A stretch of 64,000 bases of DNA from Bugula neritina (GCA_964035545.1 OZ037769.1:10446633-10510632); one strand, 5' to 3'. Shown: positions 34,856 to 43,509, counted from the first letter of the stretch. Notes: generated by a model from the sequence alone, not told the origin. Numbers and translations: made by a program.

Positions 34856-37800
34856 ATAACAAACACTTTATTAAAAAGCTGTCTCACATGCGGTCTTTGG
34901 CCGAATGCTCTACATACTGCTACAGCATAGCTACTTGCCGAACTGTAATATATCAGCCAAACAGGATTTGTCTCCTCATTTCTGGATATTTTGATGAGAT
35001 AGCTATAGTAGAGGAAACTAATAAGAACAGGCTAACAGATGTAATAATAGAGCTCAGAACAAGGACCTACCAAATGTCGAGGACTGGTAGTAAAGTAAGG
35101 AAATTTCCAACCTAGTCTCGCTGTTTGAATATTCTTAGAACGTACTACAGTGCTTTTTAACTTTTATGGTCTAGTTATTGCATGTATTTTATAATGAAAT
35201 ATTTAAAAGCTCTCTTTTCTTTCAAGTCACAATTAGTGCAAGGACAAAAACTATTTTACTAGCTGTTAACTGTGCCCTAGGTCATGACTCGTTGGTGAGA
35301 AGAAACAGTGATATTTTGTTTCTCTTTCTGACATCACCAAATTAGCCCTTCTGGAGTTTGGTTCATCTCACATCTAATCTTAACAGACTGTATTATGCTG
35401 CTGTGTGTTTAATTCAAGGCTTAAATAGTCTCTCATTCTACGTTTTGCAAAGTACACACAATTCTAAAATGAGTTGATGTTATGTTCACAGACTATAGAG
35501 AGATGTAAGGTTGGTATTCAGTTAGGTATTATAAAACTATAATTTCTATATATTATATTAAATGCAGTGATTTGTCAGGTTAACAGCATTGGAATGTATC
35601 TACTGCCCGTACTAGGTACCAGTGACGTGTCCATCTGAATGCTCAGGTAGTTCTCGCTGTCTCTTAGATTGTTCTGGAATCCCATTTACATCTGAACCCA
35701 TGTGCATGGATGTGGAGGAGAGTTTGAAAGGTGAGATGTGAATAGCACAATGTTTTATATACAACATAATATAGCTGAATTATAATATTCTAGTATAATT
35801 ATATGTTGAACGATTGGAATAAAATGGCTCAGGATTGATAATACAGTTAAAATAGCAGGTTTAAGCAGTTTTTGTTAGCTATGATGAAAGAGCCAGTTTG
35901 AAACCAATGGTAAGCAAAAGAAACATAAAATAACCAGGTATTTGAGTAAAACATTTACATAACATAATAATTCAAAACACTAAATTTGGTATATTATTGT
36001 TCTCGTACATCTATCACAACTCTGATGTAATACTACAATACTGGTATCACTTGTATTATATAATATTATTTGCATTATATAATATCACTTGTATGACATA
36101 ATATCAGATGTATGAAATAATATCAATTATATGACATAATATCATGATAATATATATAAATAGATGCAGCCGACAGTAAACAAGAAGTTGTGACGCACTA
36201 CGTACAGGCAAAGGAATACTATCTCAAGGGCTTTAATTCTCACAATAACGTCGATGGGACGGAGTTTTTTGTAAGTTTTGGTCTATCTCTATCTTTAATA
36301 GCATAAATTTTAACTCAGACTGGTAAAATGCTTAGGAGATTTGCTAAACTTAGCTATGTCTCTTATTTTTTAATGTGTACTATTTTTGTTGTTTTGCATG
36401 TAGGGTAGCAACAATGGTTTTCATTAGAGAAGCTTTGGGAAAGTCATCAAAATACTAGCAAAATCTAAGGCTTGCTGGTGTTAAATTTTTTTAACACTGC
36501 AATATGATATACTTGTCACAAGTAAAAAATAAACTTGTTATTTACTGTATATTAATAGCACTTGAGGATGGCAGTTTAATTTTGTCTATTATTGTTATCA
36601 GTAACTGTTTACCTAACAACTCCGTAGTCTAAGCATTACATTATATATAGTTGCTAACAGCTAATTGTTTATTTGTTCAAGGATTTATATTTTCTGCTTT
36701 TATTGATTTCTTTTTAATAACTGTATAAAACAGGATTTGAGATTTTAATAAAAAAACTTTTCGTAGAAGGTACATAGTCTATTACCTGGTTATTTGGTAT
36801 TACAAACTCTGTAACCTGCATAATTTACCTTGTAAAGACGTTTCAATAAGATTTGAATGAAAACTATAAGAAAAAGTAGAAGATAACAATATTTTGATAA
36901 TTTTTAAAATATATAAATTTCAGTTAAATGTTTTAACAATTCTATGCATGAGAGTACAGTGTGATCATTATAGCTGAATGTTAGCATGTTGTACTGTATA
37001 CAGTATGGTTATTATAGCTTAATGTTAGCATGTTATACTGTATACAGTGTGGTTACTATAGCTGAATGTTAGCATGTTATACTGTATACAGTGTGGTTAC
37101 TATAGCTTAATGTTAGCATGTTATACTGTATACAGTGTGAACATTATAGCTTAATGTTAGCATGTTATACTGTATACAATGTGGTTATTATAGCTTAATG
37201 TTAGCATGTTATACTGTATACAGTATGGTTATTATAGCTGAATGTTAGCATGTTATACTGTATACAGTGTGGTTATTATAGCTGAATGTTAGCATGTTAT
37301 ACTGTATACAGTGTGGTTATTATAGCTTAATGTTAGCATGTTATACTGTATACAATGTGATCATTATAACTGAATGTTAGCATGTTATACTGTATACAAT
37401 GTGGTTACTATAGCTTAATGTTAGCATGTTATACTGTATACAGTGTGGTTACTATAGCTTAATGTTAGCATGTTATACTGTATACAGTGTGAACATTATA
37501 GCTTAATGTTAGCATGTTATACTGTATACAGTGTGGTTATTATAGCTTAATGTTAGCATGTTATACTGTATACAGTGTGGTTACTATAGCTGAATGTTAG
37601 CATGTTATAATAGGGGTTTTATGAATGGTGCCTGTTCCTATTACTCAGACTGTAAACTTTGACAAGCTGTACAAAGATACTCTACTGAGGATAAGATGGA
37701 GAGGGACACTGAGAAGTGCTTGCTCTAACTCTGAAGATCCAGCAACCGCCTGGTGGCAAATCCTCATTAATGGCACTGATGATTGTAACCTGAAAAGTCT

Positions 37801-40800: not shown

Positions 40801-43509
40801 AGTTCAGCAAAGTTTACACAGGTCATCTGGTATAGTCACCTCAAAAGAGAAAAAAACTCACACAAGTTTATAGTCACTATCCCTGTGAGAAACCCCTGAT
40901 GGAAAAGATTTTTGTTAAAGCGGATTAAGGACTTATTCATATGAGGCACAGGAAAAATCATGACTTGATACTTTTCCTAACATCATCAATAGCCTTTGTC
41001 CGGCTCAAACCCATGACCTTGCGTTTACTAGGCAAACGCTCTAAACCCTAGACTACGGCTGCTTCCTCAGTCACCTTACAAGAGAGTTGAACATTATTAT
41101 TTAAAAGTTTCTATAAATCACACCAACATTTCTGTAAGCTAATGGAAGTTTTCAGTATTAGGCAAGCCAATGAATACTATTATCAAGTTATTTAAAGATT
41201 TTTATAATTTAGTTGAAGGCTTTTGCAAAGATATCTCAGCTGGAAGTGTAGAAATTTCACTGAATTCAGATGCATGCGACTGTTCTGATAATCCAAACTC
41301 TCTGCCTCCTGAGTTCCAGGTAGGATTTATGGCTACAACTAACCGGCTAGTAGTGGAAGAGGTATTCACTGACACCAATGTCATTGCCGGTGAGTTGCTA
41401 GTAGCTATTACTAGGTCCCCGTGCTTCAAAATGTTTTCAATCTATCTTTCTCTAATTTATAAACCTACTTCGTTTTTTTACGTCCTGAGCATCTTTATAG
41501 ACATTAATGGAATGTACAAAACTGCAACATATAGTCTCATTCCTTACAAAAGCTCTAATAGAAATCTTATCATTAAATATTTTAAACAGCTGTTGTAGCC
41601 TATTTGTGGATGATAAACTTAGTTAGGAGTAACCAAGAACTTATAATTTATGTCTTCATAAATATCAATCACTATACGTTTCCATTATAGCATGCATAAT
41701 GCGCAGTCATGGAAATGCAATGTATGTGATTGGATGCCAGTACAGATTAATTGTGGTTTGTGGGTTTGCATTAACTTATAGTTTTGGTTTCATTCGCTGT
41801 AACTATTTCCATTAGCCAATAAAAAAACCGTTCCTGTAATTCGATAATGGAAACATAGTGAAAACCTAGTGAGGAGAATAATTCTAAATATACACCCACA
41901 TTGAAGAAATTATAAACTCAAATTTGTACCCATAAAGCATATAAAACCAGTGACTGTTGACATCTTATGCTTGAAGAGAAGTGACTGCAGTGCTTCAGAA
42001 TTATGAAAACACAACTTTTGCGCAACAAGATCAATGGTTCACGTGTTATTCAATGTATATCCCAAATTGTGACTGCATTCCATTCAATAAGCAAATTTTA
42101 AATTTCTAGCCTAAAATAATCTGCTGAATACATTGTCAAAAATAAAAGTCTGGAGAGAAGAGAAGAGAAAAAGTCAATCAAAAGATTACATTTTTCAAAT
42201 GATTAGTTTAGTTATTAGTAATATTACTGTTAATTTTAGTGTTAGACCCGACCAAAGACATACTGTATAGAGTTCCTCAATTTAACATTCACTTTTATGG
42301 ACTGAGTGCACCTGCTAAGGAAATCACAAATGGATTAGTGTGGGTAGGCATAAAAATTCTGATAGAAATTATCCACTCAGTTATTGTAGTCATCACAATT
42401 CTGTTGTAATTATGCTTTCACTAGACTTACTTTTCTCTTTATCTTTATTGTCTATGTAGTAAAACTTGTGCTGTGATGGTATAAATTATAGCTTATAAAA
42501 AAAACATGCAGCGACTTAGACAATATTAAGCAATAGATGTTGTGTCATTTAGGCTTGGAATTCAAACTAATTGTCACTCTCCAGTTGCTGCTAAAAATTA
42601 TTTTAAGTGAACAGTGATTTTTCTATTTTAGCAAAAGGTAAGCGATTGGTTTTAAAAGTTTGGATAGCAAACAGTTCAAATATTTTCAACAGCCTGTAAT
42701 TTTATTTTTGGCTCAGAGTTGCGAATCCACTGTTTCACCAGCATATACGTTAAACTATATACTTTTACATGTATAATTTTACCTGTCTAATTTTACCTGT
42801 GTAATTTCCAGACATTTTCTACTTACAACAAGCTACAGTCTAGCAGTGGTCTACGTATATCTCTGAGTGCCAGTGGGAGGTCTTATAAGGCAGCTAGTAC
42901 ATGCTGCCGACATTACTTTAAGATAAACGGAGCAGAATGTTTCAACCCCGGTCCAATCTCTGGCATTCACTATATGATGAGCTCAACAAACATTCACAAG
43001 CCGATTATTGGTAGGCACTAACTCAATCAGTTTATATTCCTTTTCTTTTGTCACTTGATCAGGTATGCTCTTTGCTAAGGTGGGCAACTGGGGGCCCCCC
43101 AAGGCCACCTGTTGCTCTTTGCTTATTTGTCAGGGGCCTTTTGATACTCAAGATGGGTGAAGAAAGTTATATGTATTTTGATTAGCACAGCATAAATTTA
43201 GTTTGACAAATTACTTTTATATAACAAAAAAATTTAATGGGTTCAATCATGTGGCCCTTTGTTTTGGCTTACTTGTAAATTTGACCCTCATGCAAAGAAT
43301 TTGCGTACCCTGCCCTATGCTGAAAAATGACCTCTCTTTTAGTTGAAGGTATTTGTGAAGGGATACCTGCTGGGGTAACACAGTTGACTCTACATGCTGG
43401 CATGTGTCAAGGACATACCAGTAGTGGCCTCTGTTATCTTGGATACTGCAGCTATGTTCATGTCAGTGTAGCAGAAACCTACGTGTCTAGAGAAATCATT
43501 CAGTTTTAG
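34856..43509 (+). CDS. PAN/apple-like module + Cys-rich linker + three tandem CTHRC1 C-terminal-like domains (about 593 aa recovered; start exon not found)
   Basis: 12 phase-consistent exons: 34856-35094, 35616-35730, 36164-36270, 37649-37850, 38881-39042, 39308-39411, 39937-40050, 40361-40451, 41213-41389, 42240-42343, 42812-43010, 43343-43509 (stop). Each repeat matches the CTHRC1 pattern, e.g. [58 protein letters not shown] vs recalled human [86 protein letters not shown] fits the PAN core CxxxC..C..C. Confidence 0.85.
36953..37608. repeat. 44-bp minisatellite, about 15 copies, with an internal palindrome ACTGTATACAGT
   Basis: Unit TATAGCTTAATGTTAGCATGTTATACTGTATACAGTGTGGTTAC; ends about 40 bp before the acceptor at 37648. 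Confidence 0.95.
40504..40750. repeat. (AAT)n followed by a (TA)n microsatellite
   Basis: Directly visible. Confidence 0.97.
40851..41068 (-). mobile_element. tRNA-Thr(AGT)-derived SINE, copy 1
   Basis: Minus-strand head GCAGCCGTAGTCTAGGGTTTAGAGCGTTTGCCTAGTAAACGCAAGGTCATGGGTTTGAGCC has A-box-like and B-box-like motifs and a CTAGTAA anticodon loop. The body is shared with 47054-47229. Degenerate 17-bp TSD AGTCACCTCAAAAGAGA (40834) / AGTCACCTTACAAGAGA (41069). Confidence 0.82.
43075..43312. mobile_element. Possible degenerate hAT-type MITE in the last intron of the CTHRC1-domain gene
   Basis: Ends resemble AGGTGGGCAA...TTGCGTACCCTG, with GGCCC subterminal motifs; heavily diverged. Confidence 0.35.

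What the first reader, a model, noticed from the sequence alone, without database searches (positions are those of the whole stretch)
34856..43509. Collagen-less protein with a PAN/apple module and three tandem CTHRC1 domains
Known: CTHRC1 is a secreted protein with a short Gly-X-Y helix and one C-terminal globular domain; it trimerises and modulates Wnt/PCP and TGF-beta signalling. Seen: three diverged copies of that domain in one chain, no Gly-X-Y in the 12 recovered exons, and an N-terminal PAN-like and Cys-rich segment. The Cys pattern differs per repeat ([32 protein letters not shown]). Inference: a single-chain pseudo-heterotrimer in which triplication replaces collagen-driven trimerisation, with PAN adding protein or glycan recognition. 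I know of no described protein with this architecture. The ORF track shows only fragments of it.
Basis: partly seen in the sequence, partly recalled or inferred. Interest (0 to 1): 0.82.

Follow-up and report, generated by a model that had tools for sequence, protein, structure and literature searches.

The report
Collagen-less triple CTHRC1-head secreted protein gene
This is a real, intact 13-exon gene of a bryozoan (most likely Bugula neritina) for a probably secreted protein that carries three different CTHRC1-type head domains on one chain and no collagen stalk. One chain probably forms the three-lobed C1q-like head that normally needs three chains, and this copy is a solitary, conserved member of a family that no paper I found describes.

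Summary
On the + strand, 34091-43509, there are 13 GT-AG exons with consistent phases and one open frame of 630 codons. I add E1, which holds the ATG, a signal-like hydrophobic stretch and the first PAN cysteine. A profile built from database relatives finds three colinear CTHRC1_C copies and nothing else in the window. No Gly-X-Y run exists in the gene or upstream of it.

The PAN and Cys-rich modules are only sub-threshold here. The copy is solitary: the nearest paralogue is 41% identical in its best exon. It has an orthologue in a sibling lineage (dN/dS 0.22, splice sites kept) and one in a more distant organism (about 55% identity, same exon order).

AlphaFold models of two Lingula relatives superpose as whole heads on engineered single-chain C1q, adiponectin and TNF trimers (Z about 25, next about 7).

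The architecture is already in databases as 'uncharacterized' Lingula proteins. Natural triple-gC1q proteins are published in mussels. This scan noted the same family at least eight times elsewhere in this genome.

No RNA data were available. The spliced product itself was not searched or folded.

The parts
34091..34223 (+). E1: start codon, signal-like hydrophobic segment, first Cys of the PAN-like module. Ends in phase 1.
   Evidence: ATG in a GGCATGG context, with an in-frame stop 30 nt upstream. Kyte-Doolittle peak of 2.3 at residues 9-21. Donor is ATA|GTAAGT. The spacing from the first Cys to the 'EC' motif is 31 residues, against 30 in a paralogue. Not verified by RNA or by an orthologue.
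34856..35086 (+). E2: rest of the PAN/apple-like module (4 Cys). An alternative donor gives an end at 35094.
   Evidence: Pfam PAN_1 and PAN_3 score 17.6 bits, E 0.0034, below the cut-offs. It is the top window hit to a Lingula PAN profile, but E is 0.22. Splice sites.
35623..35730 (+). E3: small Cys-rich module (5 Cys). An alternative acceptor gives a start at 35616.
   Evidence: Top window hit to the Lingula Cys-rich profile, E 0.042. In the sibling orthologue it has 3 synonymous and 3 non-synonymous changes, no indel, and both splice sites kept.
36170..36270 (+). E4 (D1a): first strand region of CTHRC1_C copy 1. An alternative acceptor lies at 36164.
   Evidence: Phase 1 in and phase 0 out. 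In the sibling orthologue it has 8 synonymous and 2 non-synonymous changes and no indel.
37649..37850 (+). E5 (D1b): core of CTHRC1_C copy 1.
   Evidence: Family HMM E 1.9e-7, positions 15-78. It scores best against the D1-specific profile: 24.4 bits against 16.7 and 13.0. The orthologue P0062 is 86% identical.
38881..39042 (+). E6 (D1c): end of copy 1 (GLCEGLAAG motif) plus the linker to copy 2.
   Evidence: Family HMM E 0.005. BLASTP against the D3c exon gives 2e-4. It prefers the D1 profile, 15.0 bits. No stop codon; phase 1 in and out.
39308..39411 (+). E7 (D2a): start of copy 2 (PNYNIIQ motif).
   Evidence: Splice sites and phase. It ends in W with a phase-0 donor, as the equivalent D3a exon does.
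39937..40050 (+). E8 (D2b).
   Evidence: Family HMM E 0.05, positions 17-51. 16.3 bits to a position-specific profile.
40361..40451 (+). E9 (D2c): VNGKHC strand region.
   Evidence: Weak on its own (E 3.3) but colinear, at positions 48-66. Phases fit.
41213..41389 (+). E10 (D2d): end of copy 2 plus the linker to copy 3.
   Evidence: Family HMM E 1.8e-5. Pfam E 0.024. It scores best against the D2 profile, 27.1 bits. The distant orthologue is 34% identical.
42240..42343 (+). E11 (D3a): start of copy 3 (PQFNIHF motif).
   Evidence: 47% identical to the distant orthologue, in the same order. Phases.
42812..43010 (+). E12 (D3b): core of copy 3, with the canonical CC...NGAEC motif.
   Evidence: Pfam PF25815 scores 40.6 bits, E 4e-10, over the cut-off. 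Family HMM E 8e-13. The distant orthologue is 56% identical. The best paralogue in the same genome is 41% identical.
43343..43509 (+). E13 (D3c): end of copy 3 and the TAG stop.
   Evidence: Pfam E 1.6e-5. Family HMM E 2.7e-9. The distant orthologue is 54% identical right up to the last residue.

Best explanation
Window 34091-43509 (+) is one intact protein-coding gene of 13 exons and 630 codons, in a genome that matches Bugula neritina. The product reads as: signal peptide, a PAN/apple-like module, a small Cys-rich module, then three mutually diverged CTHRC1 C-terminal domains (D1, D2, D3) joined by linkers of about 18-20 residues. There is no collagen helix.

By analogy with models of its relatives, the three domains of a single chain most likely pack around a pseudo-threefold axis into one C1q/TNF-like head. 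The gene then fixes the identity and order of the three 'subunits', and the collagen stalk that trimerises canonical CTHRC1 is not needed.

The head would present one asymmetric binding surface, and the N-terminal PAN-like and Cys-rich modules would add a second contact. That makes the protein a soluble recognition or bridging molecule of the extracellular space. Unlike the clustered, fast-duplicating paralogues, this copy is solitary and conserved across species. I read that as a fixed endogenous partner (matrix or cell surface) rather than a variable foreign one.

Shown: the gene structure, the three domains, the absence of Gly-X-Y, purifying selection and the orthologues. Inferred: secretion, single-chain trimer packing for this protein, and the function.
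For: Gene model:
- All 12 introns are GT-AG and phases are consistent.
- The CDS is 1893 nt.

Three domains:
- The family HMM hits only these exons in the window, in colinear order.
- Pfam passes its cut-off for D3.

No collagen:
- No collagen-type Gly-X-Y run anywhere in the window.

Selection:
- The sibling-lineage contig L016 keeps all six splice sites of E3-E5.
- Its only exon indel is an in-frame 3 nt.
- dN/dS is 0.22 (binomial p = 8e-5), while introns carry many indels.

Distant orthologue:
- E10-E13 lie in the same order at 34-56% identity.
- That is above the best in-genome paralogue at 41%.

Solitary copy:
- There is no paralogue of the PAN or D1b exons at E <= 0.01.

Family:
- At least 148 CTHRC1_C exon matches occur in the genome.
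- Lingula proteins carry PAN + 3 x CTHRC1_C.

Fold:
- Two AlphaFold models of Lingula relatives have pTM 0.69 each.
- Their whole heads align to 4dou, 5hkj, 5hzf, 5kca and 4zch at Z 22-25.6, rmsd 3.3-3.8 A, over 336-351 residues.
- The next match scores about 7.5.

Literature:
- The CTHRC1 C-domain was already predicted to be C1q-like and to trimerise (PMC7058181).
Against: - No splice junction and no single transcript is shown directly.
- E1 and the signal peptide rest on sequence features only, and no orthologue covers them.
- The spliced product of this gene was neither searched nor folded, so pseudo-trimer packing is transferred from relatives about 25-30% identical.
- The relatives' models rest on a shallow 10-row alignment and a method trained on the very single-chain trimers they match.
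- D1 has lost the canonical Cys before the W and the fourth Cys.
- PAN is below Pfam's cut-off.
- The function is inference only.
Confidence: 0.6

Rival explanations
1. Beads on a string. The three domains do not pack within one chain. Each pairs with domains of other chains, giving trimers of chains or a cross-linked extracellular network (matrix, cuticle or adhesive material).
For: - Canonical CTHRC1 and C1q heads assemble between chains (PMC7058181).
- The mature product has an odd number of cysteines, 27 by my count, which could allow inter-chain disulfides.
- Other database proteins carry 4, 5 or 9 copies, so tandem arrays are not always threes.
- A monomer AlphaFold run cannot test inter-chain packing.
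Against: - Both relatives' models place the three domains as one compact head matching single-chain trimers at Z about 25.
- The linkers are short (about 18-20 residues) and similar to those of the relatives.
- The three copies are as different from each other as C1q A, B and C are, which suits a fixed heterotrimer.
- The odd cysteine, in D1, is a Tyr in the sibling lineage.
Confidence: 0.17
2. Immune pattern-recognition lectin. The gene belongs to an expanded recognition repertoire, like the bivalve C1qDC proteins, and binds microbial glycans.
For: - There are at least 148 CTHRC1_C exon matches in clusters on four contigs.
- A mussel triple-gC1q protein takes part in the immune response (PMC5519582).
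- Single domains of the models resemble TNF-like bacterial lectins at low Z, 6.5-6.8.
Against: - This copy lies outside the clusters and has no close paralogue.
- It has orthologues in two other lineages and a dN/dS of 0.22.
- That pattern is closer to a conserved endogenous function than to an arms-race receptor.
- No binding data exist.
Confidence: 0.15
3. Not one functional gene. It is either a decaying paralogue, or the three repeats belong to separate transcripts.
For: - There is no RNA evidence.
- Pfam alone misses D1 and most of D2.
- D1 has a non-canonical Cys pattern.
Against: - The frame of 630 codons is uninterrupted across 12 phase-compatible GT-AG introns.
- The sibling lineage shows purifying selection and conserved splice sites.
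- A distant orthologue keeps E10-E13 colinear.
- The open frames that hold the D2a and D3a exons have no ATG.
- The exons that end D1 and D2 run on into linkers without a stop.
Confidence: 0.05

Closest known systems
Lingula anatina uncharacterized proteins LOC106162620 (XP_013395411.1), LOC106165752, LOC106180315 and LOC106178942
   Same: The architecture is the same: signal, PAN, Cys-rich segment, three CTHRC1_C domains and no collagen. The domain-start motifs and linker lengths are similar. D1 of the window scores best against the D1 position of these proteins.
   Different: Identity is only about 25-30%. Positional correspondence of D2 and D3 is ambiguous. PAN passes Pfam's cut-off there but not here. 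None of them has been studied.
Clustered PAN + triple CTHRC1_C paralogues of the same genome (contigs C5 8.1-8.5 Mb, C9, C3 and C6)
   Same: Same domain order and mostly the same intron positions and phases.
   Different: - Exon identity is 30-47% at most.
- In those copies the signal peptide is a separate exon and the whole PAN module lies in one exon. Here an intron splits PAN.
- Those copies split D3 into more exons.
- This copy lies about 2 Mb from the nearest cluster and has its own orthologues in other lineages.
Vertebrate and cnidarian CTHRC1 (Leclere et al. 2020, PMC7058181)
   Same: Homologous C-terminal domain (Pfam PF25815). It is secreted and predicted to have a C1q-like jelly-roll fold that trimerises.
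   Different: CTHRC1 has one C-domain behind a short Gly-X-Y helix and trimerises between chains. Here there are three C-domains in one chain, no Gly-X-Y, and extra N-terminal modules. By that paper's definition (collagen repeat plus C-domain), this is not a Cthrc1 gene.
Engineered single-chain C1q, adiponectin, Cbln1 and TNF-family trimers (PDB 5hkj, 5hzf, 4dou, 5kca, 4zch; PMC4774423)
   Same: Three jelly-roll protomers are linked head to tail in one polypeptide and form one trimeric head. They are the best structural matches of the relatives' models.
   Different: They are man-made fusions of gC1q or TNF domains, with 6-9% sequence identity to the models. The present protein is natural and built from CTHRC1_C domains.
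HcC1qDC6 of the mussel Hyriopsis cumingii (PMC5519582), and CTRP4 with two gC1q domains
   Same: Natural, secreted, collagen-less proteins with tandem C1q-type heads. HcC1qDC6 has exactly three.
   Different: They carry true gC1q domains (another Pfam family) and no PAN module. That paper never uses the word 'trimer', so single-chain packing was not discussed there.

Membership tests
CTHRC1_C domain proteins (Pfam PF25815) | At least one match to the CTHRC1 C-terminal domain model above the curated cut-off | tested here: met
   E12 alone scores 40.6 bits against a cut-off of 27. E13 scores 25.6 bits. The genome scan agrees.
CTHRC1_C domain proteins (Pfam PF25815) | Copies 1 and 2 are also homologous to the domain | tested here: met
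   With my own HMM from 96 relatives' domains: D1b 1.9e-7, D1c 5e-3, D2d 1.8e-5, D2b 0.05. The hits are colinear and no other window hit has E < 1. Pfam itself gives only E 0.024 for D2d.
Cthrc1 genes sensu Leclere et al. 2020 | A short collagen triple-helix (Gly-X-Y) repeat N-terminal to the C-domain | tested here: not met
   No exon of the model has Gly-X-Y repeats. The only run of four or more G-x-x triplets in the window is a Gly-rich stretch at 49121, outside the gene.
Cthrc1 genes sensu Leclere et al. 2020 | A single C-terminal domain per chain | tested here: not met
   Three copies lie in one open frame.
PAN/apple domain (Pfam PF00024 / PF08277) | A match above the curated cut-off, with the conserved Cys pattern | tested here: inconclusive
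   E2 scores 17.6 bits against cut-offs of 21.4 and 21.1. The Lingula PAN profile gives E 0.22. The position and Cys spacing agree with relatives whose PAN passes the cut-off. The module is split between E1 and E2, and the joined sequence was not scanned.
Lophophorate PAN + triple CTHRC1_C family (unnamed) | The order signal, PAN, Cys-rich, D1, D2, D3 in one chain | tested here: met
   Exon order and phases. Profile hits. The signal is inferred from hydropathy only.
C1q/TNF-like single-chain trimer (structural class) | Three jelly-roll domains of one chain packed around a pseudo-threefold axis | not tested
This was tested only on models of two Lingula relatives: Z 22-25.6 to 4dou, 5hkj, 5hzf, 5kca and 4zch.
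Expressed, spliced gene | RNA reads across the 12 junctions | not testable with these tools
   No RNA run holds the stretch.

The most novel reading that the evidence does not exclude
Gene triplication replaced collagen-driven trimerisation in an old lophophorate lineage, before bryozoans and brachiopods split. That would have produced a natural single-chain heterotrimeric C1q-like head. This solitary copy would be its conserved, single-copy representative with a fixed endogenous partner, possibly in CTHRC1-type matrix or Wnt/PCP signalling. The clustered paralogues would then be a later recognition repertoire derived from it.
Probability: 0.35. Interest if true: 0.65.

Novelty: new variant of a known kind. 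Interest (0 to 1): 0.5.

Why it matters
C1q, TNF and CTHRC1 heads normally work as trimers of separate chains. Protein engineers fuse them into single chains to fix stoichiometry and subunit order. A natural family that did the same with CTHRC1 domains would show how a heterotrimeric recognition surface can be hard-wired in one gene. It would also give a tractable monomeric form for studying what CTHRC1-type heads bind, which is still unclear even for human CTHRC1. This copy is the most useful entry point in the family, because it is single-copy, intact and conserved in at least two other lineages.

Tried and rejected
- **RNA evidence:** none. The look-up of sequencing runs listed only one DNA-type run.
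- **Read laying:** I sent those places to no search tool afterwards and masked them in scripts that searched.
- **Paralogue-guided exon finding:** tblastn with three paralogous loci found only the D3 exons, because this copy is too diverged.
- **A false lead:** a 318-aa open frame on C9 that seemed to join two domains without an intron is only a microsatellite read through.
- **Pairwise phmmer with Lingula proteins:** too weak for D1 and D2. A family HMM was needed.
- **Orthologue of E1/E2:** the word search with the PAN exon found nothing, so E1 is unverified by comparison.
- **Positional orthology:** clear for D1, partial for D2, ambiguous for D3.
- **Splice alternatives left unresolved without RNA:** the E2/E3 junction (35086/35623 in phase 1, or 35094/35616 in phase 0) and the E4 acceptor (36164 or 36170). 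All these sites are conserved in the sibling lineage.
- **Bacterial hits:** several bacterial proteins with many matched stretches did not reach E 1e-4 with my family HMM. I did not count them as the same architecture.
- searching or folding the spliced 630-residue model was left out. Every search was done exon by exon.

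
Full report
**What is there.** The window is AT-rich animal DNA, with microsatellites and short exons. It is contig C5:10446633-10510632 of a 216,009,554-base assembly. That size and its large contigs (C3, C5, C9) are consistent with the published 216.00-Mb assembly of Bugula neritina, most of which is scaffolded into nine chromosomes (PMC11480708). An exon of a paralogue falls in a 90%-identity cluster with GenBank protein KAF6039055.1 of B. 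neritina. I did not test the organism further.

**Gene model.** On the + strand I read 13 exons:
- E1 34091-34223
- E2 34856-35086
- E3 35623-35730
- E4 36170-36270
- E5 37649-37850
- E6 38881-39042
- E7 39308-39411
- E8 39937-40050
- E9 40361-40451
- E10 41213-41389
- E11 42240-42343
- E12 42812-43010
- E13 43343-43509

All 12 introns are GT-AG. The phase left by each exon is the phase the next one needs. The exon lengths sum to 1893 nt, or 630 codons, ending at TAG.

E1 is new. Its ATG sits in a good context 30 nt after an in-frame stop. It is followed by a hydrophobic stretch with a Kyte-Doolittle peak of 2.3 at residues 9-21. Next comes a Cys placed 31 residues before the 'EC' of E2, against 30 in a paralogue.

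Two junctions have equally canonical alternatives that only RNA can settle. They are E2/E3, and a 6-nt choice at the E4 acceptor.

**Three CTHRC1 domains.** Pfam's CTHRC1_C model (PF25815) passes its cut-off on E12 (40.6 bits). It also hits E13 (25.6 bits) and, weakly, E10. It misses D1.

I therefore collected relatives with an exhaustive HMMER search, started from a near-complete single-exon domain of a paralogue. From them I built a family HMM of 96 domain segments. I ran it against all 2771 open frames of the window on both strands.

Only this gene's exons score. They fall in three colinear sets:
- D1: positions 15-78, then 76-102
- D2: positions 17-51, 48-66, then 80-127
- D3: positions 17-78, then 81-127

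E-values run from 8e-13 to 0.05. E9 is weak at 3.3, and the next unrelated hit is at 1.2.

The copies are far apart. The D1c and D3c exons are 31% identical, and the D1b and D3b exons are not significantly similar by BLASTP.

**No collagen.** No exon holds Gly-X-Y repeats. The whole window has a single run of four G-x-x triplets, a Gly-rich stretch at 49121 outside the gene.

**N-terminal modules.** E2 gives PAN_1 and PAN_3 at 17.6 bits, under the cut-offs. Against profiles made from Lingula relatives, E2 and E3 are the top window hits, but at E 0.22 and 0.042. So PAN-like and Cys-rich are likely by position and Cys spacing, not proven.

**One gene, and a living one.** The evidence for a single functional gene is therefore indirect.

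1. The exons that end D1 and D2 run into linkers without stops. The open frames holding the D2a and D3a exons have no ATG.
2. A word search with the E5 frame found one 80-residue ORF at 86% identity. Its 3.1-kb contig (JGI sample 3300002729) aligns to 35376-38758.
   - Introns differ by 11% and carry many indels.
   - E3-E5 keep all six splice sites and have only one indel, an in-frame 3 nt.
   - They show 15.5 synonymous against 14.5 non-synonymous changes.
   - dN/dS is 0.22, with p = 8e-5 for a deficit of replacements.
3. ENA metagenome assemblies ERZ17400xx hold a more distant orthologue. E10, E11, E12 and E13 lie in the same order at 34, 47, 56 and 54% identity, and it is conserved to the last residue.

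The best paralogue in the same genome reaches only 41% on E12. There is none at E <= 0.01 for the PAN or D1b exons. So this is a solitary, old and conserved member, about 2 Mb from the nearest cluster, in a genome with at least 148 CTHRC1_C exon matches.

**Relatives and architecture.**
- Lingula anatina has at least four predicted proteins with PAN + 3 x CTHRC1_C, all named 'uncharacterized'.
- The B. neritina draft annotation holds fragments named 'CTHRC1'.
- Unnamed metagenomic proteins end in three copies, or hold nine. An Oscarella protein has collagen, fn2 and four copies.
- D1 of the window prefers the D1 position of the Lingula-type alignment: 24.4 against 16.7 and 13.0 bits, and 15.0 against 10.9 and 8.7 bits. 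D2 does so partly, and D3 is ambiguous.

This suggests, but does not prove, that the triplication predates the bryozoan-brachiopod split.

**Fold.** Instead I modelled two Lingula relatives with a 10-row alignment.
- Both models give pTM 0.69.
- The three domains are confident, and the N-terminal third is not.
- VIA-align places each whole head on the engineered single-chain trimers of adiponectin (4dou), C1q (5hkj, 5hzf), Cbln1 (5kca) and APRIL-BAFF-BAFF (4zch).
- Z is 22.1-25.6, rmsd 3.3-3.8 A, over 336-351 residues.
- The next match is about 7.5. Foldseek agrees.

The linkers of the window's protein are about 18-20 residues, within the range of the relatives. For this gene it is a transfer.

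**Literature.**
- Leclere et al. 2020 define Cthrc1 as a collagen repeat plus the C-domain, and predict a C1q-like trimerising fold.
- They note a brachiopod-specific diversification and collagen-less C-domains in choanoflagellates.
- The passages I read do not mention tandem copies of the domain within one chain.
- No paper links CTHRC1 with bryozoans in substance.
- A natural collagen-less protein with three gC1q domains is described in a mussel, without any discussion of trimers.
- Single-chain C1q is an engineered reagent.

**Earlier notes of this scan.** At least eight notes on other DNA of this genome describe the same family and reach the same reading. I used two of them to locate paralogues. 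I re-derived the Lingula relatives and the structural match independently.

**Verdict.** It is a new variant of a known kind: a CTHRC1/C1q-type head made single-chain. It is catalogued but unstudied. This copy is the conserved singleton of the family.

Noticed in passing
window 36955-37609: A 44-bp minisatellite of 14.9 copies, 93% matches, lies inside intron 4 of the gene. The sibling-lineage contig L016 has the same repeat but only about 7 copies, so the array is old and varies in length.
   Followed up: partly
window 17035-26194, - strand: A rhodopsin-family GPCR gene in at least three exons (7tm_1 E 5e-35, 2.5e-12 and 6e-9) lies upstream of the CTHRC1-type gene, on the opposite strand.
   Followed up: partly
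window 55085-56743, - strand: A 553-residue open frame encodes an F-box plus leucine-rich-repeat protein (F-box-like E 1.7e-11). The long open frames at 52608-53435 and 58684-59910 (- strand) have no Pfam match.
   Followed up: partly
window 61014-64000, + strand: A GC-rich (46-58%) retroelement with an aspartyl protease and a reverse transcriptase (RVT_1 E 1.2e-35) runs off the window end. Earlier notes of the scan place a Gypsy element just beyond the window.
   Followed up: no
window 44317-44885 and 40528-40691: There is a long (AC)n array of about 280 units just downstream of the gene and an (AT)n array in the intron between E9 and E10. I worked beside them.
   Followed up: no
P0061 (1395 aa), P0025 (904 aa), P0036 (1885 aa), P0026 (Oscarella, 784 aa): Other database proteins carry CTHRC1_C in tandem. 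One has nine copies and two have exactly three at the C-terminus behind long unrelated N-terminal parts. One sponge protein has collagen + fn2 + four copies. Threes and multiples of three recur, but not always.
   Followed up: partly
This species then has an odd cysteine count (27 in the mature product) and the sibling an even one, so that Cys is probably unpaired or dispensable.
   Followed up: partly
L016 against window, E3-E5: The synonymous distance in exons (dS 0.21, from only 84 synonymous sites) is higher than the intron distance (0.12). The sample is small and I have no explanation.
   Followed up: no
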